Of a DNA stretch of 64,000 nucleotides, positions 656 through 43,797 are shown in pieces; position 1 is the first letter of the stretch, and each line of letters begins with the position of its first letter. The stretch comes from Macrostomum lignano (taxonomy: Eukaryota), in assembly GCA_002269645.1 (NCBI GenBank), contig NIVC01000121.1, positions 124,001 to 188,000 on the forward strand, given 5' to 3'. The notes beneath the pieces are model-generated. The model ran no database searches, was not told the DNA's origin, and saw only the letters and a program-made list of their open reading frames with translations. The translations under genes and the position numbers were made by a program.

Positions 656-706
656 AGTGATGCAAATTCTCCATCGCAAACGCCTCTCAAACCCGAACAC
701 CTGCAG

Positions 707-3700: not shown

Positions 3701-6054
3701 CGTCAGACTCTTTTTGAGCATTCGTCTGACTCTTTTTGAGCATTCGTCTGACTCTTTTTGAGCATTCGTCTGACTCTTTTTGAGCATTCGTTTGATTCTT
3801 TTTGAGCATTCGTCTGACTCTTTTTGAGCATTCGTTTGATTCTTTTTGAGCATTCGTCAGACTCTTTTTGAGCATTCGTCTGACTCTTTCTGAGCATTCG
3901 TCAGACTCTTTTTGAGCATTCGTCAGACTCCTTTCGAACATTCGTCAGACTTTTTGAGCATTCGTCAGACTCCTTTCGAACATTCGTCAGACTTTTTGAG
4001 CATTCGTCAGACTCCTTTCGAACATTCGTCAGACTCTTTTTGAGCATTCGTCAGACTCTTTTTGAGCATTCGTCAGACTCTTTTTGAGCATTCGTCTGAC
4101 TCTTTCTGAGCATTCGTCAGACTCTTTTTGAGCATTCGTCAGACTCTTTTTGAGCATTCGTCAGACTCTTTTTGAGCATTCGTCAGATTCTTTTTGAGCA
4201 TTCGTCAGAATCTTTTGAGCATTCGTCAGAATCTTTTGAGCATTCGTCAGAATCTTTTGAGCATTCGTCTGACTCTTTCTGAGCATTCGTCAGACTCTTT
4301 TTGAGCATTCGTCTGACTCTTTTTGAGCATTCGTCAGACTCTTTTTGAGCATTCGTCTGACTCTTTGACTTTTCGTCTGACTCTCTTTGATCATACGTTT
4401 GACTCGTTGACTCGTTGAGTATTCATATAATTCTTTCCTGACTCCCAGCCTGACTCTTCTGACTTGCCCCCTCCCCCGCAGAGTTCCCCGAGCTCATGTG
4501 CAAAGACGACGCATCGGCCAAGAAGTGCCGACGCTGGCGGGCTGCGGGCCACTGCGCCAGCAACCCCTACACCATGCTGAAGATGTGCAGAAGGACCTGC
4601 GGACTCTGCCACACTAAAAAGGCTAAGGCTTGTGAGACTGCTTGGGGATTTTCCCTCTCTGACTCCCCATGGGTGTCCCTCTTTGACTCTCCATGGGTGT
4701 CCCCTCTCTGACTCTCCATGGGTGTCCCTCTTTGACTCTCCATGGGTGTCCCTCTGTGACTCTCCATGGGTGTCCCCTCTCTGACTCTCCATGGGTGTCC
4801 CTCTTTGACTCTCCATGGGTGTCCCTCTCTGACTCTCCATGGGTGTCCCCTCTCTGACTCTCCATGGGTGTCCCTCTCTGACTCTCCATGGGTGTCCCTC
4901 TCTGACTCTCCATGGGTGTCCCCTCTCTGACTCTCCATGGGTGTCCCCTCTCTGACTCTCCATGGGTGTCCCCTCTCTGACTCTCCATGGGTGTCCCTCT
5001 TTGACTCTCCATGGGTGTCCCTCTGTGACTCTCCATGGGTGTCCCTCTCTGACTATCCATGGGTTTCCCTCTCTGACTATCCATGGGTGTCCCTCTCTGA
5101 CTCTCCATGGGTGTCCCTCTGTGACTCTCCATGGGTGTCTTTCTCTGACTCTCCATGGGTTTCCCTCTCTGACTCTCCATGGGTGTCCCTCTCTGACTCT
5201 CCATGGGTGTCCCTCTCTGACTATCCATGGGTGTCCCTCTGTGACTCTCCATGGGTGTCTTTCTCTGACTCTCCATGGGTTTCCCTCTCTGACTCTCCAT
5301 GGGTGTCCCTCTCTGACTATCCATGGATGTCCCTCTCTGACTATCCATGGGTGTCCCTCTGTGACTCTCCATGGGTGTCCCTCTCTGACTCTCCATGGGT
5401 TTCCCTCTCTGACTCTCCATGGGTGTCCCTCTCTGACTCTCCATGGGTGTCCCTCTCTGACTCTCCATGGGTTTCCCTCTCTGACTCTCCATGGGTGTCC
5501 CTCTCTGACTCTCCATGGGTGTCCCTCTCTGACTATCCATGGGTGTCCCTCTCTGACTCTCCATGGGTTTCCCTCTCTGACTCTCCATGGGTGTCCCTCT
5601 CTGACTCTCCATGGGTGTCCCTCTCTGACTATCCATGGGTGTCCCTCTCTGACTATCCATGGGTGTCCCTCTCTGACTATCCATGGGTGTCCCTCTCTGA
5701 CTATCCATGGGTTTCCTTCTCTGACTCTTCTTGGGTGTCTCTCTCTGACTCTCCATGGGTGTCCTTCTCAGGCGTGTCCCTCATATACTCCGAACACTCC
5801 AAGTCACCCAAAGACAACTCAAGGTGAATCCCGAACCCGCAGCCTGCCGCAACATCATGTCCGTTCGTCGATGTAAAATCCTGAAGCGCAAAGGCCAGTG
5901 CGGCACATCCTTTGTGAGCACAGCCTGCCGCAGAACCTGCGGTTTGTGCAAAGCGGGCGACAAAATTGTCGAGGAGAAATCGACAAACAAAACTGCCAAA
6001 TCCAGCAGACGAGGACACACTGTGGTACTGCGATCTACCGAGGACAAGGATTAA
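707..6054 (+). CDS. 3' part of a secreted Cys-rich protein: TIL domain exon (707-898) plus two ShKT-domain exons (4482-4631, 5843-6054); 5' exons lie outside the window
   Basis: Exon 707-898 reads CDKDKVYTTKMQPCPKSCEN...EGCACKKGLVLDGRKCVRPEMC (TIL Cys spacing). Exon 4482-4631 reads CKDD...CRRW...GHC...MLKMCRRTCGLC and exon 5843-6054 reads CRNIMSVRRC...GQC...ACRRTCGLC (ShKT). The acceptors ctgcag|707, ccgcag|4482 and ccgcag|5843 and the donors GTGAGT at 899 and GTGAGA at 4632 are all phase 1 and join in frame. Stop TAA at 6052-6054; AATAAA at 6097. Confidence 0.8.
960..4385. repeat. 22-bp tandem satellite (GAGCATTCGTCAGACTCTTTTT), ~3.4 kb, filling the TIL-ShKT intron
   Basis: Directly visible with recurring variant units. 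The 22-aa periodic ORFs (MLKKSLTNAQKESDECSKRVRR) equal three units. Confidence 0.97.
1274..1587. mobile_element. Solo LTR (314 bp) inserted into the 22-bp satellite
   Basis: Unique sequence with TGT...ACA termini, flanked by a perfect 5-bp direct repeat GTTTG (1269-1273, 1588-1592) derived from the satellite unit. A TATA-like TATAAAG is present on the minus strand. Confidence 0.8.
4651..5765. repeat. 24-bp minisatellite (CTCTCTGACTCTCCATGGGTGTCC), array 1, intronic
   Basis: Directly visible; gives (MESQRGTP)n and (SLSDSPWV)n ORFs. Confidence 0.97.
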
Positions 6055-6410
6055 TGAGTCACATTTGAAATAGATGATCTGGAAGAATTATTGAATAATA
6101 AATGAGATATTACAGTGGTGATGGAATTTGAAAAAAAATAATATATCATCAGTGACAGTCTATTTAAAATAACAAATAGCTTCCATTTTAATGTCTCGCA
6201 ACATTTGAAACTCTCCAATGCTTGAGAGTATTATATTGCGCGTCCATTCTATTTTTTCCAGATTAATGCAAATTTAACATTTGCGAATAGCTATATGGTC
6301 AGCTCCCTAGAAACCTGTCTAAAAAACTAATGTATCCAATTCTACTTAATTAATTCGTCTCTTGTAATTGCAGCATGCGGGGTGTCCGTGCGCGATTTTC
6401 GATTCCAAAT

Positions 6411-6560: not shown

Positions 6561-6567
6561 CCTTTTC

Positions 6568-8387: not shown

Positions 8388-8899
8388 CAGTGACGGCCAC
8401 AGAATTCGGCGGTGGCACGATAGACTTCTGACCACTGGCATGCAGTGTGCAGGATGCTGACAGCTGGTTGCGAATGACAAAAGTTATTAACGCTTTAAAT
8501 CATGCAGGCGAGTTACGTGCGGGGCACCGTGCGGGCCACCCTATCCAACGCAGCTGGCATTTGGGTTGTGATGATGTACATGTACGTGCACCTCTGCAGG
8601 GTGCAGATTAAGCGACATTTGTGACACAAGGCAATTGCTGCCCATTCCGCCAACTCCCCTGAGCAGGCACACAAGCGCGCGGACACGTACCCAGCTGTCA
8701 AACGCACAGGCACACTCACACAGGAGTGTACAGCGGCCCAACTTTATTTATCGTTAGGCATGTACACTTCACAGGTGCCTTGAAGGGTTGGCCCTCAGGG
8801 GCGTTAATTTGATCTGTTTCATTTGCGTGACAGTGAATTTAAAAACGACATGTATTTGTACTTTTTCTGTGTATTTTGTGATGACGCAATGCTTTAGTT

Positions 8900-9290
8900 T
8901 GAGACTCGCTGAGGATGTCCAGCAGTTGAAGTTCTTCCACAGTCAATTGGCTTGATCTGGGAAATTAGAGAAATTCGCAACAGGGTATCCACAGTTACCT
9001 GGTTCCCACCTGTTGAAGGTCCAGAAGCTCCGCCTGGATGAAGACTATAGTGACCAACGAAGTCAGAGCTGATGCAGTCAGATGTGATCGACATGCTGAT
9101 GAAACTTGGAGACTTGGCAAGGCTGCAGTGAGGCGCAGTGCTGATTGGCGCACAGGGATGTACTGAATACACTGGCAGAATCGTTGAATATCTCGACGGT
9201 CTGGAGAGCTGACAATAAGTTCTTGTTCGAGAAGGTTCTCGTGTTCTATAATTTCGTGTGCCTGCATTTGCTCTGGACGTTAAACCACAG
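8900..9290. repeat. Degenerate fragment of the foldback/piggyBac-like family seen at 37905-39103
   Basis: Shares GGCTTGATC.G.GAAA.TAGAGAAAT.CGCA.CAGGGT, CTTGGCAAGGCTGCA.TGAGGCG and GCAGAATC.T.GAATATCTCGACGGTC.GGAG with 38530-39030. Confidence 0.7.
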
Positions 9291-11464
9291 CAAATAAATT
9301 GCCAGGGGTACCGGCTATAACCCACCGGAAGAGTGCACTGCCAAGTCATGCAGTCACAGAAAAATACAGTGCCCCATACTCGTACAGCGCCATCGAGCAT
9401 GCAACCAAAGCTGTAGTTTAAACACAGAAAAGCATAAAATACGACATGTAAATCGTACATGTAGCAAATACATGAACTTCTGCCCATTTTTATGAGAGTT
9501 GTTGCTGGACTAATGAACTGTGCCTCTGACGTTTAGAAATATATTTAGTATATTTGGATTGAGATTTTTATGCGTATACACAGCACCCTGGCACTGCACT
9601 GAATATTTACAGTATAAAGTCAAAAAGTTATTTGTGGTATACATAAGCGTGTAATTACGTCCTTATTGCAGGCTTTCGCGTTTAATATAAATGGTAATAA
9701 TGGCCAAAAGTTTTAACAACAAGGAAGAAAGGGTATTATAGCATCCACAATATATCTTACTGACACTCTCTATCCTAGATTCAATTTAATTTACTGAACA
9801 CTTTAAAGAGTTGTACACTCGCTACAATAAGGTAAGACTTAAGTCAAACTGAACTACATCCTCTGTATAATTCAAAATTTCCACTTCAGATAGCTAGTAG
9901 ATAGTGGAAAAATTTTAGGCACAGAAATAAGGACCTAAAACAAGTCACGACCAAATGCACACGCATAAATGACGTACACTTAACTGTACACACCGATAGT
10001 ACCTTGTAAAACGTCACTGCAGTGCAGTAGCTTGAACAAATTGACGTTGGTTGCCAAACTTTGACTGCTGGACTTTAACTGCCAGCGAAATTCCACTTTT
10101 GATTGCCGACAATTTAGATTAGATTAGATTTGTCAGCTTTCATTTTAGGGTTTACGGTCAGCAGCCTTGTAGTTCCAAAATGGAAAAATTGAATTAAAAG
10201 TGTCCTACCTCTGACTCCCAGAATGAACTTCAGTTTCTCGAAAATCTCAAATCGAACAAATAAAACAAGTTGAAAATTGGATAAATTTGTATTGAGGAAC
10301 TTTCTAATTGCGACTGTAATGTAAGGGTACAGCGCAAGCAAACTTTTTTTAATTGAATGCGTGCTAATGCTTATTGTCTTTTAACTTTTGCAACAAGAAT
10401 AGTATATTCATAGCCTTTAATTTCATTTTCCTGAAAGTCCCAACTTGGGCAACATATTGTTTTTATCTCAAACTGTGAGTTAAATATACTTCCTATTTCA
10501 CAAAACTGGTTACAACTTCGTTCAAAAATGAACTTTTATGGTTGCAGATGTACAGTAAAGGTACGGAGCAAAGAAACCTAAAGAAATATATCGTACGACA
10601 CTTTTTATCATAATACGCTCGTAATAGCTTTGAATTTTGCTTCTTGCAATTTGCGACTTCTAAAATGTTTTTGCAAACGGAAGTTTTCAACAACAAGTCC
10701 GTCTATTAGATGACTTCAAACTTTCTGAATTGGCACCAGCCAGACTGCATTTATCAGTATTAGAAAATTTTTGCCACTGTTAGCGACTATTCTAATAATG
10801 GTTAAATTCAAATCTGGTCTTCACAATTTTTAAAGCATAATAAAAACCAAATGCGCACGGCTTGCAAACATGGGGAAAAGTAGACCCCGGATGCGATATT
10901 TTCATACGAGTATCCATATCGCATCCAGACGCCAGTGAAAGAACCCCAAGCTTGCAAAAAAGGATATGAAATGCACTTTCTGGTCCACAGTAAATACGCA
11001 TGAATAAAGACATGATAAATAAATTCTAGGCATCATACATCAACTTGACTCGTAGAAGTTCGGTAAAGTTCAGTTTAAAAACATAAAAAGACTGACCAGA
11101 AAGCACAAAATTTATCCTTTGAAAGCGCTATAATATTTATATAAATGCATAATCATAGATGCAAAATAAATAAATACGACGCGGCATTCAAGAAGTCGGG
11201 GCAGCTCGTGCACTCGCTACGCAGATTCTCTAGACATAGCAGTACAGGTGAGAACACGCTGGTATGCTAGAGAATCTGCAGTGATGTAAAGAAAAAATTC
11301 CAAATCTGAGTGTTGCCGAACTTTTTGAATGTCGGTCGTATAAAAAATTAAAATATAAATTAAATGCAAAAATATATAAATAAGTAGAAAAAATAAACAA
11401 AATATATTGATTAAAAATAAATGCATTTGCTTTATTATGCTTATAAAAATTGCTAGGTGCCAAC

Positions 11465-14400
11465 TCAAAAAAGCGCCGACTTGGCCACTTGTACTTTAAC
11501 AAACAGCGTATCATCCTTCAGGAAGCCCTTGGGCTCCAGGTCGTCCTTCGGGCAGAACTGCTCAAAGCCGAACAGCTGGCCCGTTGGCTGCGTCGGCCGC
11601 TGGAACTGAGACGACCCGTCTGGCACAATGTGCCGCGTCAGATGGTCAGACGGTGAGCTCTGGTTCATCAGAGTGAAGCTCACCTTATTCTTGAACGGCC
11701 AAGTCAGGGCGGCATCGTAGGGGCCCTTGTTGATTCGGGCGAACAGGCTGATGTGACTGCCGCGGCCGCGGCCCTGGCCGTTGAGATAGACCACCGCTGA
11801 CAGCTTGTAGCTGGGGGAGGGGGATGTTAAATAGCTGATGTCAGAGTAAGCTGTCATACAGAAGCCACTGAAGGAAGGTGGGGCCGTAGCCCAGCTTGGG
11901 TCTGCTAGTGAAATTAACGGCTTTGACGACCAACCCACAGACAGCTGCCTCTAACAAAGAAAAAAATGTCAGTTAGCTCACCCGAATTTGTCAGTGAACA
12001 GCAGAGGCGAATACAGCACTGGCTCATAATCTGTGCTGGTTGTTCTCTCTTTAAAAAAAGGAATTTTCCATATAAGAGTGCCGTCACTGCTGCCAACCTC
12101 CTGCAGACTGATGTTGCGATCCAGGTCGCATATTCGAACTTCCTGTAATAAAGAAAGAAACATAAAGTTATGAGAACTAAACTAATTAAACTAACAGCAA
12201 CAAAGTACGCAGTGCTTCAGTAAGCCCTAGAGTCGCTCAACATGCGGGTATCTCTGGGTCCTGGCTTGACCCCGCCTGAACGGTCCCGGCAAAGTGAGCA
12301 GCAGGACGTACTGGACAGGCTGGGGCAGCAACTCTCAGCCAGGATCACATGGCCTGCGCCAGTAGGAGTCGCTGCTGGATGGTGGACGGAGCTGGACTGG
12401 ATTTTCCATTTCCAACCTCTGAAGAACATCATCTCTCTTGCGATCCAGGAGCTTTTCTTTATTCCTACCAACCGATGAGGATGGACATCAACATATGCTA
12501 ATGAGCCTTGTACATCTTGGATGACTTGCGATCATGTATCTTTGGAAGATACTCGGGGCGGTCTTAATACCGAAAACTAGTCGGCTGCAGTTGTAATCGC
12601 TGAAGTCGCTGACAGTCGCTGAAGTCGCTGACAGTAGCTGACGATCACTGACAGTCGCTGACAGTCGTTGACAGTCAATGACAGTCGCTGACGATCACTG
12701 ACAGTTGGTGACAGTCGCTGAAGTCGCTGACAATCGCTGAAGTCGCTGACAATTGCTGACAGTCGCTGAAGTCGCTGACAATCGCTGAAGTCGCTGACAA
12801 TTGCTGACAGTCGCTGACAATCGCTGACAGTCGCTGACAATTGCTGACAGTCGCTGACAGTCGCTGACAATTGCTGACAGTCGCTGACAATCGCTGACAA
12901 TCGCTGACAATCGCTGACAGTCAATGACAATCGCTGACAGTGGCCGACAATCGCTGACAGTCGCTGACAATCGCTGACAGTCAATGACAATCGCTCACAA
13001 TCGCTGTCACTGACGATCACTGACAGTCGCTGACAATCGCTGACAGTCAATGACAATCGCTGACGATCACTGACAGTCGCTGACAATCGCTAATGATCAC
13101 TGACGATCACTGACAATCGCTGAAGGTCGCTGACAAACCCAGAGTCACGAGAGCTAGGAAAACCAGCGCGAAAAATAATAAAGACCAACACAGGCTTGGG
13201 GGCAGACGGACCCTCCGGCTAAGCCTAAGTCAACAAAAAAGAGCAAAACAGAGCAAAGAGAAAATAGACTAGCCGCACCGGCCAGCCAATCAAAACCCCG
13301 CCTGGGAGGAAGGGGCCAAACCCGCAGCCAATCAGCTCTGAGCACGGGGCAGGGCGCACGGCTGGGGAGGGGCACGCAAAAAGCCCGGCCGCCAGCCAGA
13401 CCTAAAGTACCTGCAAACCAGACAACAAGGGCGCTTGCACTGCATAACCAACTAACAGACTGACTAACCGACTAAGTATAAACAAACAGATTAACAGATG
13501 GCAAAAAATAATAAAATACTTGGGTTACAACGAAACTGACGAACCTTAAGCGACATGGCGCACAGAAGTTCCTTGTAAACGGCATCTCCAGCGCTAAGCT
13601 CTTCGTACTGGCGCTGCATCTGGGCCATAAACGGCTCCATAGCCCGATAGGTCACAGCCAGCTTCTTACTCATCACGTCGCGCTGTTTGTCCAACTCATC
13701 TGGAGCAATGCGCGAGAATCTCATTCTCTCGAAAAACTCTGCCTGACCACGCGGATCGCTGGTCTGCTTGGGGTGCTCCGGATAGCCAAACTTCTCCAGA
13801 TTGTACACCAACTCGGCTTTGTCAAATACATCTTCAACTATTTTCATTTCCATTTGCGAGGTTGAAACGCTCGAAGCTGAAGGCTGAGGGTACAAGTAAA
13901 TTCAATTGACATTTGACTCGACTTGAACAACTTTAAACTTTTTGCTGGGTTACACTGCCAAGCGCAAATAATCAATCATAAATAAAATTGGTTTACCAAC
14001 TATGCTCACCTCCAAACCAACAGCACCAGAATCGCCAACTTCTTGACCTTCTGAGCACTGTACAGCGCGCGATTTAGCTTTAGCCAGGAGCCTGTCAGTG
14101 TGCAAGGCTACATATTCCTGGCGATGCTCTTTAGCATTGGACACTGGCCCGCAGCCAAACGGACATGGTTGACCATCAGACCAACCAACCGGACAGTCAG
14201 TCAGCGCGTGCTTCCGCCTGGCTTCATCAGTGTCTCTTATCCTAGCTGAGCAGGAGATGCAGAGCTGCGTACTGCCAATGCACTCTCGATTTTTGTGCTC
14301 CTCTATCTGGTCATTGGGCACAGATTCTTTGCAAGACTCGCACACGACCCTTCGTTTCGGGCACTGGCTTTTCAGATGCTTGTCCATTGCACTGGCTGGC

Positions 14401-14777
14401 AATTGAGTGTTGCATTGGTCACAATGAATTTCTCTGTGCTGGCAATCTGATTCCATATGCTTTATTAGATCAGGCAGCAACATCTTCTCTGGGCAAGGTT
14501 GCCAGCGGCAGTTAAATTTTGTTTTATTGAGTTCCCGGCTCATTGCTGGATCTGGATTGACACTGCTTCTGGTCAAATGAGGCACGTCATCTTCGTCTTC
14601 TTCTTTACAGGCAATGCAGTCCATGCCTTCATCAGTTATTGCGTCTGCACAGTATCTGTGACCGCACACAGCCTGAACAGGTGACCTCATCAAATGCTTG
14701 CATTTCGGACACTTGAGTCGATTTTGCACCTGTTTCAGTTTGCCAACTTTTAAGCCGCATATGCCTCGGTCACCCAT
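11465..14777 (-). CDS. TNF receptor-associated factor (TRAF): RING, TRAF zinc fingers, helical region and MATH domain; 4 exons, 537 aa
   Basis: Exons 14777-14010, 13883-13545, 12142-11982 and 11810-11465 have GT-AG sites in phases 0/0/2 and total 1614 nt. N-terminal CPKC...CGHRYC...CIAC RING, then repeated C-x2-C...H-x3/4-C fingers. C-terminal FGYKLSAVVYLNGQGRGRGSHISLF...GPYDAALTWPFKNKVSFTLMNQ is the TRAF/MATH signature. Confidence 0.92.
12590..13135. repeat. 10-11-bp tandem repeat (TGACAGTCGC/TGACAATCGC) in TRAF intron 2
   Basis: Directly visible; absent from the homologous intron of the paralogue (42169-41918). Confidence 0.93.
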
Positions 14778-17749: not shown

Positions 17750-18194
17750 GGTCACTGGTCAGATCGTCATATTGGCCATTTCGTCATATCGGATGACGAA
17801 GTGACCAGAAGCAAAGTAGCTTTGAAAAATAATATGACGAAGTGACCAAATATTTAGTTATGCTGGATACTTCGTCATCAAACCAATCAATCTGTGTGAG
17901 ATTCGAGTTAGTGTAAACTATTTTTGTCTTTATTAACTATCAGCTGCGGCAAGCAGAACCGATCGATCGACAGGTTTTATCAATCGAGATGTCAAAATGA
18001 CTGGGATGATTAGGATTCCATGTAAATATGTTTAATTGCCACATCAATTCACTTGGAAGTTGGAACTGGTGGATGACGAAATGACTCTCTTGAGGTAGTG
18101 CATGCAAATCAAGATGACGAAGTGACCCTAGTCGAGGTGGGCACCCCAGACACCCCAGATGACGAAATGGCAGATGACGAAGTGACTAGGAACC
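17750..18194. mobile_element. MITE nested in the MULE
   Basis: GG...CC termini with inverted arrays of TCGTCAT and ATGACGAAGTGAC. Flanks TGTGTGTG (17742-17749) and TGTATGTG (18195-18202) form an 8-bp TSD with one mismatch. Confidence 0.65.
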
Positions 18195-25801: not shown

Positions 25802-26015
25802 GGTCACTCGGCTGCGGCTTACAAGGCGGCGAAAGAGAGACTGGAGCGCGAGTATGGTGGCAAGAGGCGGCAGTTGGCTATTTTACTTAGAGGAATTAGA
25901 CAGTTTTCCACCCATGAAGCAGAATTGTGCAGAGGAGCTGAAGAAATTTGCGAATCTGCTGAATGTAGCTGTAATTAATTTGGAAGAAGCTGGCAAGAAC
26001 TCCGAACTTAGTGAT

Positions 26016-33022: not shown

Positions 33023-36000
33023 TGTCGTATTTTTATGGCCCCGAGGGAACTGATAGGATCTTCTGGTCACGTGAGTTTGGGTGACAACAAGCTCAGCCAA
33101 TCAGAAAATTCGACGTGCGTTATAACAAATCGGCTCAGCCAATCAGCGTCGAGGTGTTCCATTATAACAAATTGCGGTCCAGTCGACGGCTATTTAAACC
33201 GGCGTTTTTGGCCCGCTCGGACTCAACCTCCTGCTCCGCCTCCTGGGACTTTGGCCTAACTTAGACTTCCCGGAGCTCGACCCTCGTCTCTTGATCCCCG
33301 GATCGCGACTCCCCCCATCATCATCAAGGACGAACCCCCAGTCGTCAGCAGCGAACATCAAAGTCAAGAGCATCACCTGCTAGCTATCTGCGAAGATTGT
33401 GACATCAGCATCATCCCGGGTCTACAGCTGCGAAGCACTAAGCCGATTCGGTCACGTGGATTACCTGGTCTCCGGCTGTTGAGTTTCTGATTGGTTGGGT
33501 GAGAGGCTACCTAGACTTGCTTGATTGGGTGATTCCCTTGTCTGTCCCCTATTTCAGTAGCTGGATTAGGCGCACACTTTTGCTCATTTTGTTCAGTAGT
33601 GCTGTTATCGAGGCAGAAATCATTCAATAATACTGTTAGTAGTCTGAGACTCCAATTCAATCTGAAGTGTGAAGTGATTTAAGGAGAAGGTTAAATCTGA
33701 CAGTTATTTTTATCGGTTTTATTTCTTTGTTCGCCGATGGCTCAGATGAGTAGCTAAGCTAGTAGGCGCCGGTCACATTGGACCAATGGCAAGGCAGTTC
33801 TCAGTCGATCAATCTATCAAATCAGTGAGCAAAATTGCCAATAGTGCAAAATCGGCGCTAGAGATGTACTCTGTGAACTCTAGGTCCGCCAAGCGGCTCG
33901 GGTAATGAATCATGCGGTCTCCGGTGTTCGAAAGGCCAAAAGTACAATTCCTCGTATTTAGCAATGTAATAGTACATGTAGCTACCACATAGTCTCGCCA
34001 CTGCAAGAATCCTCTGAACAAGTCCCCTCTGTACCTGCATGGCCAATGCGATCAAGTCCCAGCAGTGTCCCTTAACATCGGCTATGACTTCGAGATTGAC
34101 AGCAAAAAGACACTAGTTGGCAGGTAAGTGCTAAGCCCTCTCTAGTCGGAAGCCCGAATTCGAAAGTTCCGGTTTGGTGAGCCAGGACGCACGGGCTGGT
34201 GACAGCGGGTTAGTTAATCTGTGGATTAGCTGATCTCTACCTTCAAAATTCTCCCTGCTTGTCTCTCGCTGTCCCTCTCTTAGCTATTGGACCTAGACTG
34301 CTCGCCACAAGATCAAGCTACCTTGGGGCTGACCATCTGACAGGAGTGGGGGGCCAGGACTCTAATTGATTTATTTCTGACACCTGAGGCCCGAAGGCTT
34401 CCCGAAAGGGGCCGAAAAGGCCGAAACCCATCAAATCGTTAAATATCTCCACGTTTGAGAAGGTGCGCAACAAAAGTTGGCCCGTGTTCTTGAATTTCCC
34501 GTGTCTGCGTTGCTCCTTCTAGCGCAACAAAACCATTTTCAGGGAAGGGGGAACCATGCAGGCTAGACCACCAGGCTACGGCCGCCCCTAAAGTGCACTC
34601 CTTTTACACTTACACAGTGCCTCCATACACAGTCGTCAACATAATTAAAGTCCTGTTTTATGGGAGTTTCTGAACTAGTTAATAAGCATACTTGACGTTA
34701 AGGAATTTACAGATTAGCATAAACATGTACACAAAGTGTACTCTGGTACCACACCTACATTATATACATAACAGCGCACTACATTTGATGTGTTCCTTAT
34801 TACCCGACTTTCGATAATCAAGGAACAATCACTTCTAGCTCTGTAGCTAGGCAACCCAGTAATCAAATTAAGGTATTCAATCACCTTTAATCCGGATTCG
34901 TAGATCTCGTTCTTGAGTCGTTCTCAACTGTAGATCTCTCAGTAGATCTCGTAGACTTCTAGACGTCTTCAGGTGTCGATCAGGTCCGAGTTTTCTTCTT
35001 CTCTCCTGTAGAAGTAGTTCCGGCCGGAATCTGTCGTTCGGACCAATAGGAAGCTTCCAAATTAACAATGGGGATCCCTGCGCCAAACTGCGGTCTTAAT
35101 TAAGCCTCCTTCTTCTAGCAGTACCTCTATGCACTCTAGGAATAGCTCCGGAAACCACTGATAGTCTTCTAAGATCTATCAGGGGCAGTCCTTCTGGAGA
35201 CTGCAACCAGTACGAGCGTCTAAACAGAGTCTAAAGAGTCTAAACAGACCCAAGAGTCTCAACAGACTCAAACTAAACTCAAGTCACACTGGACTTGAGC
35301 GAGACGTCTCTAACAACAACGGGCGCAAATAAGGAAGGCTTACCGCAACAACTCGACCGAGTCTTGGTCCAGGAAGTCCGACTGTGGCTTCCTCTTCGGA
35401 GCTCTTCTCCTTCCGGAGGATTTGTGGCTCCGGGTCCGTTCCGGACCACTTGTATTTATAGGCGTTCAGACCTTTCTCGAGGTCGTACATCACTGTCTTC
35501 GCAAATGTCAAAGGGTCACGATTCGGTGGCTGTCAAGCATGACAGGGTAGAAAGTTGCGCAACTAGTCTACTGTAAAAGCGCATGATTGGTTACCGTAGC
35601 TGGTAGACTTTGATTGGTTCATCCGGAGCAACCCGAGTGCAAACCAAATGATGAATTGAAGGTGAAGTTTGAATTGACAGTTGTTGGTCGCACGTGATTG
35701 GGTGATTTCTAAAATTAGCATGCTCAAGGTCTCTCTCTTCCTATTGGTTAGTCAGAATATACTTATAATTCAAAGCATACCTTTATAAATTCTCTTCAAC
35801 TTACTACTGAATAAAATGTGTGAGTAGTACATTAACACTTTTATGTCTTTTTTACGGGAGGTAGAACACTCTACACATTTTGTGCAATATAATAGCCTAG
35901 CGTCATTTACTTAAAAAGAAAGGGTACACGTGTATAGAATCCACACACACACAAACTTCTGGCAGTATCTGATAAAATGTACATGTGCCCGTCTATATCC

Positions 36001-36459
36001 TATATTTAGTCTACAGTACATGCATACACTTCAAGAGATGAACACTCGTACACTCACTCATAATCTCTGTTAAGCCCTGTTAAACTGAAATACAAATGTA
36101 CACCCCATGGTCAGAATTATTTTTTAAGAAATTTTATCTATTGATAGTTTAAGCTAGTGTAGTAATTTATAACTTTAGGAACAAAAAAGAAGGTACTAAA
36201 TGAGTCACGACACACCATATGCCATATTGAACGGCTGCACATTCCCAAAATAAAGAACATGGATGGTACCTTGTAAAAGGCAACTTCCATAAACTTGGGC
36301 GTTCAAAATTCGTGTGTTCAAATTCAAACTCAAATTGTTTAAAAATGGACTCCGCTTTCCAAACTTTGACTGCTGAACTTTCAATTGCCAGCGATACTCG
36401 ACTTCAAAACAAAATTAATAGTTTTAGTTCTAAAATGAAAAAAAATGTAATTGCAAATT

Positions 36460-37530
36460 TGTCCCTCTCTGACTCTCCATGGGTCCCTCTCTGACTCTCC
36501 ATGGCTGTCCCTCTCTGACTCTCCATGGGTGTCCCTCTCTGACTCTCCATGGGTCCCTCTCTGACTCTCCATGGGTGTCCCTCTCTGACTCTCCATGTGT
36601 GTCCCTCTCTGACTCTCCATGGGTGTCCCTCTCTGACTGTCCATGGGTGTCCCTCTCTGACTCTCCATGGGTGTTCCTCTCTGACTCTCCATGGGTGTCC
36701 CTCTCTGACTCTCCATGGGTGTCCCTCTCTGACTGTCCATGGGTGTCCCTCTCTGACTCTCCATGGGTGTTCCTCTCTGACTCTCCATGGGTGTCCCTCT
36801 CTGACTCTCCATGACTGTCCCTCTCTGACTCTCCATGGGTGTCCCTCTCTGACTCTCCATGGGTGTCCATCTCTGACTCTCCATGGGTGTCCATCTCTGA
36901 CTCTCCATGGGTGTCCATCTCTGACTCTCCATGGGTGTTCCTCTCTGACTGTCCATGGGTGTCCCTCTCTGACTCTCCATGGGTGTTCCTCTCTGACTCT
37001 CCATGGGTGTCCCTCTCTGACTCTCCATGACTGTCCCTCTCTGACTCTCCATGGGTGTCCCTCTCTGACTCTCCATGGGTGTCCCTCTCTGACTCTCCAT
37101 GGGTGTCCCTCTCTGACTCTCCATGGGTGTCCATCTCTGACTCTCCATGGGTGTTCCTCTCTGACTGTCCATGGGTGTCCCTCTCTGACTGGGTGTTCCT
37201 CTCTGACTCTCCATGGGTGTCCCTCTTTGACTCTCCATGACTGTCCCTCTCTGACTGGGTGTCCCTCTCTCTCCATGACTGTCTCTCACTGGGTGTCCCT
37301 CTCTGACTCTCCATGGCTGTCCCTCTCTGACTCTCCATGGGTGTTCCTCTCTGACTCTCCATGGGTGTCCCTCTCTGACTGTCCATGGCTGTCCTTCTCT
37401 AACTCTCCATGGGTGTCCCTCTCTGACTGTCCATGGGTGTCCCTCTCTGACTGTCCATGGGTGTCCCTCTCTGACTCTCCATGGGTTTCCCTCTCTGACT
37501 CTCCATGAGTGTCCCTCTGTGACTCTCAGT
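36460..37530. repeat. 24-bp minisatellite, array 2 (same unit and strand as 4651-5765)
   Basis: Directly visible. Confidence 0.97.
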
Positions 37531-37904
37531 GAAAGCTAAATGCTAAAGGTAATGAACAAATTATAATTTAATATAGTTATATAAATTTCAGTTTTTCGTA
37601 AATCTCAAATCGGACAAATAAGTTGAAATTGACTAAAAGAGAGTTGCGACAAGAAACTTTATAAGTGCAACTGTACTGTAAGGGTACAGCGCTAGCAAAA
37701 TTGAATGTTTTCATATATTTATTGTCGATTTATTGGTTACAGCACATGTTACAAAAGGAACTTTCTAGTTGAAACTGTACTGTAAAGTTACAGCGCAAGG
37801 AAGCTTAATAGGAAGTAACATTTTTCATTATATTAATAGCTTTAAATTTCACTTTTTGAAAATGCTTTTGGCAATATAGGAAGTTTCCAGCAAAACGCGT
37901 CAGA

Positions 37905-39103
37905 CAGTAGAACTACCAAGAGGGGGGGGGGAAATTCCCTCCCCCCTGACAACCTTCTGCTGCGCCGGAACGGAGCAACGCAGGCACACGAAATTCAAGA
38001 ACACGGGCTAACTTCCTGCTGCGCACCCTCTCAAACAAGAATCAAGTCGCCAGCCCTCCGGACCGTCGAGATACTCGACGATTCTGCCAGAAGGTCGGGT
38101 TTTGTGCTAGTGTATTCAGTACACCCCTGTGCGCCAATTAGCACTCCGCCTCAGTGCAGCCTTGCCAAGTCTCCAAATTTCATCAGCACGTCGACCGGTC
38201 GACACATGTGTCTGCATCAGTTCTGACTTCGTTGGTTCGTTGGTTGGTCAGGTTTTTCTTATCAAGCTTCAATAATGGGCAAACCTCAACTGCCGGACAT
38301 TCTCAGCTGGTCTCTCGAGCCTTCAGTCATCACCCCGACGCCGTCGGGGTTTGCAGTTGAGGTTTGCCCATTATTGAAGCTTGATAATAAAAACCTGACA
38401 TATTTGCAACAGGGTGTCCATAGTCACCTGGTTTAATCTGTTGAAGGTGCCGACGGCGTCGGGGTGATGGCTGAATGCTTGACTGACTAGCTGAGAATGT
38501 CTGGCGGTTGATTCTTGCCCACTGTCGAGGCTTGATCGGCGAAACTAGAGAAATCCGCATCAGGGTTTCATATCATAGGCACCAGGTGACTATGGACACC
38601 CTGTTGCAAATATGTCAGGTTTTTATTATCAAGCTTCAATAATAGGCAAACCTCAACTGCAAACCCCGACGGCGTCGGGGTGATGACTGAAGGCTCGAGA
38701 GACCAGCTGAGAATGTCCGGCAGTTGAGGTTTGACCATTATTGAAGCTTGATAAGAAAAACCTGACCAACCAACGAACCAACGAAGTCAAAACTGATGCA
38801 GACACATGTGTCGACCGGTCGACGTGCTGATGACTTGGCAAGGCTGCACTGAGGCGGAGTGCTAATTGGCGCACAGGGGTGTACTGAATACACTAGCGCT
38901 TATGGGAAAAATCCGACCTTCTGGCAGAATCATCGAATATCTCGACGGTCCGGAGGGCTGGCGACTTGATTCTTGTTTGAGAAGGTGTGCAACAAAAAGT
39001 TAGCCCGTGTTCTGGAATTTCGTGTGCCTGCGTTGCTCCGTTCCGGCGCAGCAAAAAATTGTCAGGGGGGGGGGAATTCTCCCCCCTCTTGGTAGTTCTA
39101 CTG
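37905..39103. mobile_element. Foldback (long inverted repeat) non-autonomous element, piggyBac-related termini
   Basis: Arms ~37905-38430 and ~38580-39103 are reverse complements around a ~150-bp spacer. Termini CAGTAGAA...TTCTACTG are followed by TTAA on the right. It shares GAATC.T.GAATATCTCGACG with the piggyBac TIR. Confidence 0.85.
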
Positions 39104-40214
39104 TTAAAAATGGCTGGGCATTCCTACTGTTAAATAGATAGGTAAAAGCCTATTAAGAGATTTAAAAAAGATAGTAAGAAAAATCTAAAACGATGTTTAA
39201 AAAATGACTAGAAATCAGTGATACGCTCGTAAACATGCATAAACGCGTTTGGCCAGGTTGCATTTATCAGTATTAGAAAACTCCCGTCGCTGAAGTGTTA
39301 GTAGAAATATTCTAATACTGGTAAATGCAACTCTGGTTTACACAATTTTTAAAGCATTAATAAAAACCAAATGCGCACGGCTTGCAAACATGGGTTTTTG
39401 TGCGATAGGAACGGAATAGTATCCTGACTTTCTAGACAACTGGTCTGATAAAATAGACCACGGATGCCATATCCAAACCTTTTCGCGCCGGAGCTAGAAA
39501 TACAAAAGCTCCGTTCCTGACGACATGATCAGCAGGGCTGACCATAGACTATAGCTAGCTAGAATCTTAATGCGCCCCTGTGCAAAGCCTTTCTAGCCGA
39601 GAAGGTAGCATTTTATACTTGGCTTGGACAAATCTTGGGTCGAAAAAAGCAGTTTCAAAGTGCATTTCACTTAATGCTCACTATATAGATTATGCAGTGT
39701 GTACCACAGAATATATTCTGTGGTGTGTACACTCGATATGTAGCTATAGATTCTACAGTTTCACTTTAAAATCTGCAAACAGGCCTTTTTGAAAGAGAAA
39801 GCACTGCACCTACTTAATACCAGTAGTGCATCATTTTTATTAAAAAGTAAATCAGCTACAACCATGGAAATTTTGCATGCATCGGATTCTGAGACTGATG
39901 ATGTCATCACAGAGAATGCTGAAACCGAGTCGTTGCATTCCATTGCAGATAAGTAAGACTTTTTTCACCCATTTTTCGTATGATCGGCGCTGCTGACCAT
40001 GCTCGGCAGGAACGGCTACTGTGAAGCACATAACTTTTCTTTTACCATTGACTCCAAAAAATTACCAGCAGTAAAGGCTGTTGGTCCATGGTCAGCAAAA
40101 GAAACCTCAAGTTTGCAAAAAGGGATATAAAATGCACTTTCTGGTCGACAGTAAATACGCATGTAAGAAGACGTGAAAGTAAATTCTAAGCATCATACAT
40201 CGACTCGATTCGTA

Positions 40215-40340
40215 GAAGTTCGGTAAGTTCATCTTGAAGTTCGGTAAGTTCATCTTGAAGTTCGGTAAGTTCATCTTGAATTTCGGTAAGTTCATCTTGA
40301 ATTTCGGTAAGTTCATCTTGAATTTCGGTAAGTTCATCTT
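40215..40340. repeat. 21-bp tandem repeat (GAAGTTCGGTAAGTTCATCTT) x6
   Basis: Directly visible; a single unit-like sequence at the paralogous site 11055-11075. Confidence 0.93.
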
Positions 40341-40752
40341 GAAGTTTATCTTTAAGTTCAGTTCAGTTAAGAGAAAAAAGCAAAAACAAAACATTGACCG
40401 ACTGACCAGAAAGCACAAAATATACCCTTTGAAAGTGCAATAATAATTATATAAATTCATAACCATAAATGCAATAAAAAATACGATGTGGCATTCAAGA
40501 AGTCCGGGGTACTTCTGCTCGAGATGCAGCATTAGGAGTTTTACGATCACAATTGAAATTTCATCGTTCATTTAATCGTGTGCAGATTGTAAAAAAGGTG
40601 CACAGTTGGTGTGTTGCGTGTCTACTAGCTGCAGAACTTTTTGAATGCCTCTCCTAATATAAATGAAATAAATATATCAATAAATATATAAAAAGATAAA
40701 TAAAATAAAAATCTAAAGCATTTGATTTATTATGCTTTTAAAAACTGCTAGG

Positions 40753-41002
40753 TGCCGACTCAAAAAAGCGTGCCAACTCAAAAAAGCGTGCCAACTCAAA
40801 AAAGCGTGCCAACTCAAAAAGCGTGCCAACTCAAAAAAGCGTGCCAACTCAAAAAAGCGTGCCAACTCAAAAAAGCGTGCCAACTCAAAAAAGCGTGCCA
40901 ACTCAAAAAAGCGTGCCAACTCAAAAAAGCGTGCCAACTCAAAAAAGCGTGCCAACTCAAAAAATCGTGCCAACTCAAAAAAGCGTGCCAACTCAAAAAA
41001 GC
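40753..41002. repeat. 18-bp tandem repeat (TGCCAACTCAAAAAAGCG) x~14, overlapping the stop codon of TRAF copy 2
   Basis: Directly visible; a single unit at the paralogous site 11458-11475. Confidence 0.95.
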
Positions 41003-42817
41003 GCCGACTTGGCCACTTGTACTTTTACAAACAGCGTATCATCCTTCAGGAAGCCCTTGGGCTCCAGGTCGTCCTTCGGACAAAACTGCTCAAACCCGAA
41101 CACCTGGCCCGTTGGCTGCGATGGCCGCTGGAACTGGGACGACCCGTCTGGCACAATGTGCCGCGTCAGATGGTCAGACGGTGAGCTCTGGTTCATCAGA
41201 GTGAAGCTCACCTTATTTTTGAACGGCCAAGTCAGGGCGGCATCGTAGGGGCCCTTGTTGATTCGGGCGAACAGGCTGATGTGACTGCCGCGGCCTCGGC
41301 CCTGCCCGTTGAGATGGACCACCGCTGACAGCTTGTAGCTGGGGGAGGGGGTTGTTTATAGTGGGTGAATGTATGGCTCGCTGATGTCAGAGTAAGGCAT
41401 ATATAAGTTAGCAGCCCAGGCTCGATTCCGAAGTGCAGTCACATTGATTTGGGAATAAATTGAAATCTGCTTGGCTCCAATCGTGCAATTAACGGCCATG
41501 AGGTCAACCCCCCCCCCCAGGCACAGTGAAGTGTACATGCCTAACGATAAATAAAGTTAGGGCCGCTGTACACCGGTGTGAGTGTGTGCCTGTGCGTATG
41601 ACTGCATACGTATCCGCGCGTTTGTGTGCCTGCTCAGGGGAGTCGGAGGAATGGGCAGCAATGCCTCTCGCGTCTCGGTTGTGACAATGTCGCTTAAAGT
41701 GCGCGAGGGTGCACACAGCCTCCCTGCCTAATGAAGAAAAATGTCAGTCAGCTCACCCGAACTTGTCAGTGAACAGCGGAGGCGAAAACAGCACGGGTTC
41801 ATAATCAGTGCTGGTTGTTCTCTCTTTAAAAAAAGGAATTTTCCATACAAGAGTGCCGTCACTGCTGCCAACCTCATGCAGACTGATGCTGCGATCCAGG
41901 TCGCATATTCGAACTTCCTGTGGTAAGGAGAGAATACTGATCTGATGACAGCAGGCACCAGGTAAACATAATTTGCGTGAATTGATGTTTATTAAAGGAT
42001 GACTCAATAATGGAGTGCCCCTGTGCATCCGATGATCTTACAAACAATATAAGGAAGCTAAATAACTGATTGACTAACTAGTTAGCTAGCTCTAATTGAC
42101 TGACTAAAAAACCAGCAAAATCAATGGCAAAAATGATCAAATATTTCGGTTACAACAAAACTAACGAACCTTAAGCGACATGGCGCACAGAAGTTCCTTG
42201 TAGACGGCATCTCCAGCGCTAAGCTCTTCGTACTGGCGCTGCATCTGAGCCTCGATAGCTCGATAGGTCACAGCCAGCTTCTTACTCATCAAGTCGCGCT
42301 GCTTGTCCAACTCATCTGGGGCAATGCGCGAGAATCTCATTCTCTCGAAAAACTCCGCCTGACCACGCGGATCGCTGGTCTGCTTGGGGTGCTCCGGATA
42401 GCCAAACTTCTCCAGATTGTACACCAGCTCGGCTTTGTCAAATAAATCTTCAACTATTTTCATTTCCATTTGCAAGGTTGAAAAATTCGAAGCGGAAGGC
42501 TGAGGGTACGAGTGGATTTAAATTGACATTTGACTTGACTTGAAACAACTTCAAACTTCTGCATGGATTGTGGAGAGCTAAAGCAGTCAGACGCTAAGCT
42601 CAAACTCTGAGAATATAGCTGAAAGCTGGTTAAACTGCCAAATCAACCATAAATAAGATTGGTTTACCAACAGTGCTCACCTCCGAACCAACAGCCCCAG
42701 GATCGCCAACTTCTTGACTTTCTGAGCACTGAGTACAAAGCTTTAGCTTTAGCTTTAGCTAAGAGCCTATCAGTGTGCAAGACTACATATGCCTGGCAAT
42801 GCTCCTCAGCATTGGAC
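40993..42817 (-). pseudogene. TRAF paralogue lacking RING and most zinc fingers (pseudogene or RING-less isoform)
   Basis: Exons 42499-42170 (in-frame 9-bp deletion), 41917-41757 and 41338-40993 are open with intact splice sites. The exon-1 remnant 42817-42681 carries a +4 frameshift and runs directly into the 24-bp array. Confidence 0.8.
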
Positions 42818-43797
42818 TCACTCTCCATGGCTGTCCCTCTCTGACTCTCCATGGCTGTCCCTCTCTGACTCTCCATGGCTGTCCCTCTCTGACTCTCCAT
42901 GGCTGTCCCTCTCTGACTCTCTAAGGGTGTCACTCTTTGACTCTCCATGGGTGTCCCTCTCTGTTCCTCTCTGCCTCTCCATGGGTGTCCCTCTCTGACT
43001 CTCTATGGGTGTCCCTCTCTGCCTCTCCATGGGTGTCCCTCTCTGACTCTCCATGGGTGTCCCTCTCTGACTCTCCATGGCTGTCCCTCTCTGACTCTCC
43101 ATGGCTGTCCCTCTCTGACTCTCCGTGGCTGTCCCTCTCTGACTCTCCATGGATGTCCCTCTCTGACTCTCCATGGGTGTCCCTCTCTGACTCTCCATGG
43201 GTGTCCCTCTCTGACTCTCCATGGCTGTCCCTCTCTGACTCTCCATAGGTGTCCTTTTCTAACTCTCCATGGGTGTCCCTCTCTGACTCTCCATGGGTGT
43301 CCCTCTCTGACTCTCCATGGGTGTCCCTCTCTGACTCTCCATGGGTGTCCCTCTCTGACTCTCCATGGGTGTCCCTCTCTGACTCTCCATGGGTGTCCCT
43401 CTCTGACTCTCCATGGATGTCCCTCTCTGACTCTCCATGGGTGTCCCTCTCTGACTCTCCTGGGTGTCCCTCTCTGACTCTCCATGAGTGTCCCTCTCTG
43501 ACTCTCCATGGGTGTCCCTCTCTGACTCTCCATGGGTGTCCCTCTCTGACTCTCTAAGGGTGTCACTCTTTGACTCTCCGTGGCTGTCCCTCTCTGACTC
43601 TCCTGGGTGTCCCTCTCTGACTCTCCATCAGTGTCCCTCTCTGACTCTCCATCAGTGTCCCTCTCTGACTCTCCATGGGTGTCCCTCTCTGTTCCTCTCT
43701 GACTCTCCATGGGTGTCCCTCTGTGACTCTCCATGGGTGTCCCTCTCTGACTCTCCATGGCTGTCCCTCTCTGTTCCTCTCTGACTCTCCATGGGTG
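42818..43797. repeat. 24-bp minisatellite, array 3
   Basis: Directly visible; same unit and strand as arrays 1 and 2. Confidence 0.97.

What the first reader, a model, noticed from the sequence alone, without database searches (positions are those of the whole stretch)
4651..43797. One 24-bp minisatellite at three unlinked, co-oriented loci, with an empty paralogous site showing microhomology to the unit
Seen: the unit CTCTCTGACTCTCCATGGGTGTCC forms ~1-kb arrays at 4651-5765, 36460-37530 and 42818-43797. All are on the same strand, with unrelated flanks and no TIR, LTR, tail or TSD. Array 2 lies in the segmental duplicate, and the matching position in the other copy (10200-10221) holds only GTGTCCTACCTCTGACTCCCAG, which shares GTGTCC and CTCTGACTC with the unit. 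Inference: local slippage cannot easily give the same unit at three unrelated sites. The pattern suggests a 'mobile minisatellite' copied into breaks by microhomology-primed templated synthesis (ectopic gap repair, rolling-circle eccDNA, or RT/telomerase-like addition). This is the best candidate here for an undescribed process.
Basis: partly seen in the sequence, partly recalled or inferred. Interest (0 to 1): 0.72.

Follow-up and report, generated by a model that had tools for sequence, protein, structure and literature searches.

The report
Locally copied 24-bp flatworm minisatellite
Three 1-kb arrays of one 24-bp repeat within 39 kb of the Macrostomum lignano genome are real, but they are explained by a local gene duplication, ordinary in-place repeat expansion and one or two short-range copying events, not by a new kind of mobile DNA.

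Summary
The three co-oriented arrays exist as described. The window is Macrostomum lignano (Mlig_3_7), a genome with about 15% tandem repeats. The arrays are not unlinked. Arrays 2 and 3 bracket one duplicated block, a 5'-truncated copy of a TRAF gene, and array 3 starts exactly at the truncation breakpoint. It shares derived unit variants with array 2 that array 1 lacks. The 'empty' paralogous site (10200-10221) holds a near full-length degenerate unit (19 of 22 aligned bases), not microhomology. Two other minisatellites in the same duplicated block show the same pattern: an array in copy B, exactly one unit in copy A. That is the normal signature of in-place expansion or contraction. A homeologous contig carries neighbouring arrays at the same positions with up to 4-fold different copy numbers. 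No transposon ends, TSDs or shared flanks were found. Slippage alone cannot place array 1 (an intron 4.4 kb from the solo unit) or array 3, so one or two local ectopic copying events are needed. That mechanism (template switching, microhomology joining, eccDNA) is already proposed for Drosophila and Tribolium satellites. A genome-wide census could not be run. Verdict: a new member of a known kind, of modest interest.

The parts
4652..5769 (+). Array 1 of the 24-bp unit (46 copies; one further degenerate unit up to about 5790). It fills the last intron of a secreted Cys-rich (TIL + 2 ShKT) gene on the + strand.
   Evidence: TRF; sequence; exon translations; edge test. Private variants 8A, 18T and a 25-bp CCCCTC unit.
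36460..37527 (+). Array 2 (about 44 copies), inside duplicate copy B, in the 3' flank of the truncated TRAF-B gene. Both edges are sharp and the last unit is truncated (GTGTCCCTCTGTGACTCTCAG).
   Evidence: Private variants 8G, 20T, 22A; multi-unit block duplications.
42818..43799 (+). Array 3 (about 40 copies). It starts at the exact point where copy B stops being homologous to copy A, inside the TRAF zinc-finger exon. It shares derived variants 16C and 15A with array 2.
   Evidence: 16C occurs in 14 of 83 units of arrays 2 and 3 against 0 of 46 in array 1, Fisher p = 0.002.
10200..10221 (+). Solo degenerate unit GTGTCCTACCTCTGACTCCCAG at the site in copy A that is paralogous to array 2.
   Evidence: It holds the only + strand CTCTGACTC outside the arrays in about 61 kb.
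9700..14142 (.). Duplicate copy A: 3' flank plus MATH and coiled-coil exons plus part of the zinc-finger exon of the intact TRAF-A gene (minus strand, CDS about 11468-14777).
   Evidence: Self-BLAST; alignment; k-mer diagonals; Pfam; protein P0007.
35990..42817 (.). Duplicate copy B: the same block carrying array 2, a foldback insertion and two B-only minisatellites. It encodes the truncated TRAF-B (P0006, CDS exons 40996-42490, minus strand) plus a frameshifted exon remnant at 42642-42816.
   Evidence: dS(A,B) = 0.127, dN/dS = 0.18.
42809..42821 (+). Breakpoint junction GCATTGGACTCAC|TCTCCATGGCTGTCC (copy A reads GCATTGGACAC|TGGCCCGC). Only 2-5 nt could be shared between flank and unit.
40215..40346 (+). 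Control: a 21-bp minisatellite present only in copy B (6.3 copies). The paralogous A site 11055-11075 holds one degenerate unit.
40752..41003 (+). Control: an 18-bp minisatellite present only in copy B (14 copies). The paralogous A site 11457-11474 holds exactly one perfect unit followed by the same partial repeat GCCGACT.
947..4405 (+). A 22-bp minisatellite that fills the preceding intron of the array-1 host gene. A common variant shares the 9-mer TCTGACTCT with the 24-bp unit.

Best explanation
This is a small, locally propagated minisatellite family in a genome that makes minisatellites very readily. Shown: the unit, or an array of it, sat in the 3' flank of a TRAF gene before or soon after that gene's 3' part was duplicated. 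Copy B now carries a 44-unit array there and copy A a single degenerate unit, as for two other minisatellites in the same block. Inferred: that difference arose in place by replication slippage or unequal exchange. Adjacent units can form hairpins through their CCATGG palindrome, and each array contains multi-unit block duplications and private variants. Shown: array 3 lies exactly at the breakpoint that truncates copy B inside an exon, and it shares derived variants with array 2. Inferred: array-2-type sequence 5 kb away was used as template or joining partner when that break was repaired (template switching or microhomology-mediated joining, 2-5 nt overlap), and the copy then expanded in place. 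Inferred, with the least support: array 1, in an intron 4.4 kb from the solo unit, arose by a similar short-range ectopic copying event, or was itself the source. No transposon, reverse transcriptase or telomerase-like step is needed. The arrays probably have no function.
For: The arrays and their common strand are real. The A/B duplicate is defined. The solo unit is a true homologue of the unit (the only + strand CTCTGACTC outside the arrays; 19 of 22, 0 of 500 shuffles; same flanks, aligns with array 2's last unit). Internal controls: the 21-mer and 18-mer arrays in B correspond to exactly one unit in A. Homeolog contig L002 is 97% identical, with the same arrays at the same positions but 5.7 versus 21.8, 32 versus 50, 82 versus 63 and 172 versus 131 copies. 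Units cluster by array (0 of 500 permutations), with private variants and block duplications. Variants 16C and 15A are shared only by arrays 2 and 3 (Fisher p = 0.002). Array 3 abuts the truncated exon, and no TRAF residues 1-212 lie beyond it. No shared flanks, TSD or TIR were found. Unit dimers form hairpins (z = -3.4). Of 29 arrays covering 14% of the window, only this family is multi-locus. The genome is about 15% simple and tandem repeats (PMC5730564).
Against: The origin of array 1 is not explained by any observed duplication. Its flanks are a different gene and no empty comparison site is available. The direction of copying (which array is oldest) is unresolved. 'Array ancestral and contracted in A' and 'array born in B' fit equally well. 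The overlap at the array-3 junction is only 2-5 nt, which is compatible with chance. All three consensus units are identical although the A/B duplicate has dS 0.13 and 15-30% non-coding divergence. That could also indicate recent exchange between arrays. I could not survey the rest of the genome, so 'local' rests on a 64-kb window plus about 15 kb of extra sequence.
Confidence: 0.55

Rival explanations
1. One reading: a genuinely mobile minisatellite that colonises DNA breaks anywhere in the genome by microhomology-primed templated synthesis from eccDNA or rolling circles (or RT/telomerase-like addition). The three arrays would be independent insertions.
For: The consensus is identical at three sites with no transposon hallmarks. 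Arrays 2 and 3 have sharp edges in A/T-rich flanks, as reported for some Tribolium Cast satellites (PMC11610590). Array 1 sits alone in an intron. The genome is unusually rich in tandem repeats.
Against: The supposed seed is a full degenerate unit with conserved flanks, and the same pattern occurs at two unrelated arrays. Arrays 2 and 3 bound one duplication and share derived variants. All copies lie within 39 kb. The unit was not found in the other sequence available. The unit is not telomere-like (from knowledge: the flatworm telomere repeat is TTAGGG).
Confidence: 0.15
2. Purely vertical history: one old array was carried along and broken up by segmental duplication, insertions and deletions, and contracted to one unit in copy A. 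No ectopic copying of array sequence ever occurred.
For: Array 2 and the solo unit are paralogous. Large copy-number changes between homeologs show that contraction is easy. Array 3 could be part of an array split by the rearrangement (shared 16C and 15A).
Against: The left flank of array 2 is also duplicated, so block B was not simply inserted into an array. Nothing to the right of array 3 or around array 1 is homologous to the A/B block or to each other, at DNA or protein level. At least one non-homologous junction to array sequence is still required.
Confidence: 0.15
3. The arrays are central repeats of a non-autonomous transposon (Helitron/Helentron, MITE or Tetris-like) that inserted three times.
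For: Such elements are a known route for dispersed short arrays (PMC11610590). The window holds several DNA transposons.
Against: No similarity exists among the 400-bp flanks of the three arrays except the A/B paralogy. No TSD or TIR was found. The arrays abut an exon-proximal intron sequence, an intergenic A/T-rich sequence and a broken exon directly.
Confidence: 0.03
4. Assembly artefact: reads were mis-joined through identical repeats, creating false junctions, especially TRAF-B exon | array 3 | 43800+.
For: The assembly is a redundant draft of a repeat-rich neopolyploid.
Against: The arrays are only about 1 kb, well below PacBio read length. Array 3 has its own coherent variants at both ends (the 34-bp CTCTGTTCCTC units and 16C). 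Each array has private variants. The A/B copies differ by dS 0.13, so they are not collapsed alleles.
Confidence: 0.04

Closest known systems
Classical minisatellite birth and expansion in place (Haber & Louis 1998; Taylor & Breden 2000, as summarised in PMC3389668)
   Same: A single-copy proto-unit at the homologous site versus an array. The terminal unit is incomplete (array 2 ends after 21 of 24 bases). A short non-contiguous direct repeat flanks the single 18-mer unit (GCCAACT...GCCGACT). Copy number is very unstable between homeologs.
   Different: That model gives one array per locus and does not explain the same 24-bp unit at arrays 1 and 3.
Rsp-like / 1.688 euchromatic satellites on the Drosophila simulans-clade X (Sproul et al. 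2020, PMC7403614)
   Same: One repeat is found as small blocks at several euchromatic sites. New blocks are attributed to microhomology-mediated repair, interlocus gene conversion or eccDNA. Blocks later expand by unequal exchange and move as higher-order units.
   Different: There, dozens of loci span megabases, junction types recur with 4-7 bp microhomology, insertions go into a pre-existing second satellite, and eccDNA was demonstrated. Here there are three loci within 39 kb, one informative junction with 2-5 nt overlap, and no eccDNA data.
Cast1-9 satellite DNAs in Tribolium castaneum gene-rich regions (Volaric et al. 2024, PMC11610590)
   Same: Arrays occur in gene-rich euchromatin, including next to genes. 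Most lack transposon association, and some junctions are A/T-rich.
   Different: Monomers are about 170-1100 bp, spread is genome-wide and between chromosomes in bursts, and eccDNA was shown by 2D gels.
Yeast megasatellite propagation (Rolland et al. 2010, PMC2919712)
   Same: It explicitly combines gene duplication, ectopic recombination and 'motif jumps' to explain the same tandem motif at several genes. This is the same mix as inferred here.
   Different: Those are coding repeats of 135-300 bp under purifying selection. The arrays here are non-coding (intronic or intergenic).
Templated insertions at duplication or deletion breakpoints by FoSTeS/MMBIR (Lee 2007; Hastings 2009, as cited in PMC7403614)
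   Same: A rearrangement breakpoint inside an exon is joined, with minimal overlap, to sequence that exists a few kb away in cis and in the same orientation.
   Different: The copied sequence is itself a tandem array that has since expanded, so the original templated tract cannot be delimited.

Membership tests
Minisatellite (VNTR) | Head-to-tail tandem array with a 10-100 bp unit and a length of hundreds of bp to kb | tested here: met
   24-bp unit, 40-46 copies, 89-93% matches at three sites.
Minisatellite (VNTR) | Copy number changes in place between alleles, homeologs or paralogs | tested here: met
   Array 2 versus one unit at the paralogous site. The same holds for the 18-mer and 21-mer. 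Neighbouring arrays differ up to 4-fold between homeologous contigs. Alleles of the three arrays themselves were not available.
Dispersed euchromatic satellite spread by eccDNA or microhomology repair (Rsp-like, Cast type) | The same repeat at many loci with unrelated flanks across the genome | not testable with these tools
   Only three loci within 39 kb were seen. The genome could not be searched: the peptide, transposon-ORF and homolog routes failed, and the unit is absent from the metagenome and viral collections.
Dispersed euchromatic satellite spread by eccDNA or microhomology repair (Rsp-like, Cast type) | Recurrent junction microhomology between repeat and target | tested here: inconclusive
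   There is one true non-homologous junction (array 3 left) with 2-5 nt overlap. The claimed seed at 10200 is a homologous unit, not microhomology.
Dispersed euchromatic satellite spread by eccDNA or microhomology repair (Rsp-like, Cast type) | The repeat is present in the extrachromosomal circular DNA fraction | not testable with these tools
   Needs 2D gels or Circle-seq.
Transposon-borne tandem repeats (Helitron/Helentron, MITE, Tetris) | Arrays bounded by conserved element termini, TIRs or TSDs | tested here: not met
   There is no flank similarity among the arrays beyond the A/B paralogy, and no TSD. Array edges are sharp against unrelated sequence.
Segmental duplication with breakpoint-templated sequence (FoSTeS/MMBIR-type) | A duplicated block whose breakpoint is joined to nearby cis sequence with little or no homology | tested here: met
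   The A/B block ends at 42817 inside an exon and is joined to array sequence that shares variants with array 2, 5.3 kb away. The mechanism itself is inferred.
Telomerase or RT-added repeats | A telomere-like unit, poly(A) tail or nearby RT template | tested here: not met
   The unit is unrelated to TTAGGG (from knowledge), there is no tail at the array ends, and no RNA family matches in the window.

The most novel reading that the evidence does not exclude
The 24-bp family is one of many self-propagating minisatellites in Macrostomum lignano. These would seed new arrays at DNA breaks by templated copying from existing arrays, and this process would contribute substantially to the about 15% tandem-repeat content and to the pattern of introns each filled by a different array.
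Probability: 0.12. Interest if true: 0.6.

Novelty: new member of a known kind. Interest (0 to 1): 0.3.

Why it matters
The region is a compact natural experiment on how minisatellites are born, lost and moved. One old gene duplication (dS about 0.13) gives paired sites for four different arrays. Three of these sites show 'one unit versus array', and one array marks a rearrangement breakpoint. That is useful for annotating this model flatworm, where repeats hamper assembly, and it illustrates that tandem arrays can be reused as repair templates or partners at nearby breaks. It does not reveal a new process. The same mix of duplication, in-place expansion and ectopic copying is already described for insect satellites and yeast megasatellites.

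Tried and rejected
1. I searched the protein database with the open minus-strand frame of the unit, (MESQRGTP)n, to find other arrays called as ORFs. There were no hits, and the exact array-1 ORF is not on record.
2. I looked for homeologs or paralogs of the array-bearing block. A search with TRAF-B returned only copies A and B. The TIL/ShKT host gene returned nothing. The vitellogenin cluster gave one homeologous contig, but it covers only the far side of the window.
3. I tried to sample the genome through transposon proteins. Exact ORFs are not on record. The representative search gave hits of at most 45% identity, with no M. lignano copies.
4. Exact-unit scans of metagenome and viral contigs found 0 matches.
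5. A common transposon is rejected.
6. A 22-mer-like monomer in the TRAF-B intron, considered as a second templated insertion, is rejected as not significant: score 15, and shuffles give about 0.7 such hits per window.
7. The shared 'CAG' ends of the arrays, considered as element termini, are rejected. They are unit fragments with mismatches, except for array 2 and the solo unit, which are paralogous.
8. The idea that the unit derives from a branch-point/polypyrimidine intron end (CTCTGAC...) was considered. Arrays 2 and 3 are not in any annotated + strand intron, so it was left as speculation.
9. Rfam found no RNA family in the window.
10. The first M. lignano genome paper (Wasik 2015) is not held.
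Full report
**Source and context**

The 1734-aa vitellogenin-like ORF of the window is encoded exactly once in public assemblies. It lies on contig NIVC01000121.1 of GCA_002269645.1, so the window corresponds to about 124001-188000 of that record. Cluster members are named Macrostomum lignano. The accession is the Mlig_3_7 assembly of this free-living flatworm.

[quoted passage not shown] It also reports about 180 Mb of at least 95% identical redundant blocks caused by extra chromosomes (PMC5730564). In the window itself, 29 arrays with period of 8 or more cover 14% of the sequence.

**Observation**

TRF confirms three arrays of the unit CTCTCTGACTCTCCATGGGTGTCC, all on the + strand:
- 4652-5769, 46 copies
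- 36460-37527, about 44 copies
- 42820-43799, about 40 copies

The 9-mer CTCTGACTC occurs 94 times against 0.75 expected. Among all arrays in the window, only this family occurs at separate loci. The other similar pairs are an interrupted array, transposon TIRs, or the A/B duplicate itself.

**Surroundings**

Array 1 fills the last intron of a + strand gene with a TIL-like exon (709-897) and two ShKT exons (4481-4630, 5842-6054). The two preceding introns are filled by a 15-bp and a 22-bp minisatellite.

A masked self-comparison shows a co-oriented segmental duplicate, A about 9700-14142 and B about 35990-42817.
- Copy A belongs to an intact TRAF gene on the minus strand, with RING/zf-TRAF and MATH domains (Pfam; protein P0007).
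- Copy B encodes an annotated, 5'-truncated paralog (P0006) that is 95% identical in protein.
- Between the two copies, dS = 0.127 and dN/dS = 0.18.
- Non-coding identity is 68-86%.

The duplication is therefore several times older than the roughly 3% divergence seen between homeologous contigs.

**Array 2 and the 'empty site'**

Homology between A and B continues on both sides of array 2. Flank similarity gives z = 12 on the left and z = 21 on the right. At the A position lies GTGTCCTACCTCTGACTCCCAG.
- It matches the unit at 19 of 22 aligned positions, and 0 of 500 shuffles reach its score.
- It contains the only + strand CTCTGACTC outside the arrays.
- It aligns with the last, truncated unit of array 2, including the ...GACTC(C/T)CAG end, followed by the same AATGAAC...TTCAGTTT flank.

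It is a diverged monomer at the homologous position, about as diverged as the flanks. It is not microhomology.

**Internal control**

The same duplicate contains two other minisatellites found only in B.
- For the 21-mer (40215-40346, 6 copies), the A site (11055-11075) holds one degenerate unit.
- For the 18-mer (40752-41003, 14 copies), the A site (11457-11474) holds one perfect unit followed by the same partial repeat that follows the B array.

Conversely, a 10-bp array lies in an A-only stretch of the TRAF intron. 'One unit versus array' is therefore the routine signature of in-place birth, expansion or contraction in this genome. It matches the published models of minisatellite origin: a unit flanked by short direct repeats and an incomplete terminal unit (PMC3389668).

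A homeologous contig (L002, 97% identical) carries the window's right-hand arrays at the same positions but with different copy numbers: 5.7 versus 21.8, 32 versus 50, 82 versus 63 and 172 versus 131.

**Array 3**

A/B homology ends at 42817 in B (about 14142-14144 in A), inside the TRAF zinc-finger exon. A reads GCATTGGACAC|TGGCCC and B reads GCATTGGACTCAC|TCTCCATGGCTGTCC.

The exon remnant in B is frameshifted. No trace of TRAF residues 1-212 lies beyond array 3. The array therefore marks a real truncation breakpoint, with at most 2-5 nt of overlap between flank and unit.

**Unit variants**

All arrays share one consensus, but units cluster by array (0 of 500 permutations reach the observed value). 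Each array has private variants:
- Array 1: 8A, 18T and a 25-bp unit
- Array 2: 8G, 20T and 22A
- Array 3: 5C, 11T and a 34-bp unit

Each array also repeats multi-unit blocks, which shows growth in place. Variants 16C and 15A occur in arrays 2 and 3 but not in array 1. 16C is in 14 of 83 units against 0 of 46, p = 0.002. Arrays 2 and 3 are therefore each other's closest relatives.

As single-stranded DNA, adjacent units pair through the CCATGG palindrome (z = -3.4). This is a plausible aid to slippage.

**No carrier element**

The 400-bp flanks of the three arrays share nothing apart from the A/B paralogy, and no TSD or TIR is present. Arrays 2 and 3 end sharply against A/T-rich sequence, and array 1 has one extra degenerate unit. 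No Rfam family matches.

**Interpretation**

Shown:
- A real three-locus family within 39 kb.
- Array 2 is paralogous to a single unit.
- Array 3 lies at a duplication or truncation breakpoint and is related to array 2.
- In-place dynamics are common in this genome.

Inferred:
- The TRAF-flank site is the birthplace, or at least an old site, of the unit.
- Array 3 arose when the break that truncated copy B was joined to, or primed on, array sequence 5 kb away.
- Array 1 reflects one more short-range ectopic copy, or was the source.

I cannot tell whether the array predates the duplication and contracted in A, or was born in B.

**Comparison with the literature**

It is a local event set, not demonstrated mobility, and the mechanism is already in the literature:
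- Drosophila Rsp-like/1.688 (PMC7403614)
- Tribolium Cast satellites (PMC11610590)
- Yeast megasatellites (PMC2919712)

**Limits**

Every route to the rest of the M. lignano genome failed. The unit is absent from the searchable metagenome and viral collections. Genome-wide distribution, eccDNA, transcription and read-level validation therefore remain open.

Noticed in passing
window 1-6054: The TIL/ShKT gene on the + strand has three consecutive introns, each almost entirely filled by a different minisatellite: a 15-mer (1-661), a 22-mer (947-4405, interrupted by 325 bp of unique sequence at 1271-1594) and the 24-mer (4652-5769). Without the arrays the introns would be about 90-130 nt. The gene has no product in the protein databases searched.
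   Followed up: partly
window 947-4405 versus 4652-5769: A common variant of the neighbouring 22-bp unit (CGTCTGACTCTTTTTGAGCATT) shares the 9-mer TCTGACTCT with the 24-bp unit. CTGAC-containing units also occur in the 15-mer and 10-mer arrays. I could not decide whether the adjacent arrays are related or the motif (branch-point-like CTGAC) is favoured.
   Followed up: no
window 17028-20861: A young DNA transposon with 470-bp terminal inverted repeats that are 99.4% identical and an 8-bp target-site duplication, GAATAGAG. Its 388-aa ORF has a FLYWCH zinc finger and an internal 48-bp coding tandem repeat (19319-19552). Relatives in the protein library are at most 45% identical.
   Followed up: partly
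window 37904-39104: A foldback-type element (two arms of about 530 bp, 93% complementary) is inserted only in duplicate copy B, 377 bp to the right of array 2. Related fragments lie at 8878-9308 and 34453-34553. Its termini (ACAGTAGAA...) resemble those of the element at 22623-27789.
   Followed up: no
window 22623-27789: A 5.2-kb element is bounded by inverted 359-bp repeats (94% identical). It encloses fragmented retroelement ORFs (RT-RNase H, integrase zinc finger and core) and a separate RNase H ORF. It is possibly a nested insertion.
   Followed up: no
window 40996-42490 (minus strand): The truncated TRAF-B copy lacks the RING and zinc fingers but is annotated (BOX15_Mlig017604g1, partial). 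It shows dN/dS of 0.18 against the full copy, which suggests a retained MATH-only function.
   Followed up: partly
L002 (NIVC01004552.1:1-12606) versus window about 55200-66300: This homeologous or redundant contig is 97% identical. All four minisatellites and pentanucleotide arrays sit at the same positions, but copy numbers differ up to 4-fold. The contig ends inside the vitellogenin-like gene.
   Followed up: yes
window 34268-34292: GCTGTCCCTCTCT is an exact 13-mer of the 16C unit variant. It is followed directly by TAGCTATTGGAC, which resembles the TRAF breakpoint flank AGCATTGGAC. This is the best unit-like site outside the arrays (score 15). There is no extended homology, so it may be chance.
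   Followed up: partly
window about 42560-42600 (minus strand): A B-specific insertion of about 60 bp in the TRAF-B intron contains GTTTGAGCTTAGCGTCTGACTGCTTT, which resembles one unit of the 22-bp minisatellite. It is not statistically significant.
   Followed up: yes
window 12160-13330: An A-only stretch of about 1.1 kb in the TRAF-A intron carries the 10-bp array (12597-13135). It also carries a roughly 110-bp repeat found at 30222-30331 and 46238-46346. The B intron is only about 258 nt.
   Followed up: no
window 51092-56296 (minus strand): A single 1734-aa ORF with vitellogenin N-terminal, open beta-sheet and VWD domains. UniProt models from the earlier assembly are longer (2081-2441 aa), so upstream exons probably exist.
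   Followed up: no
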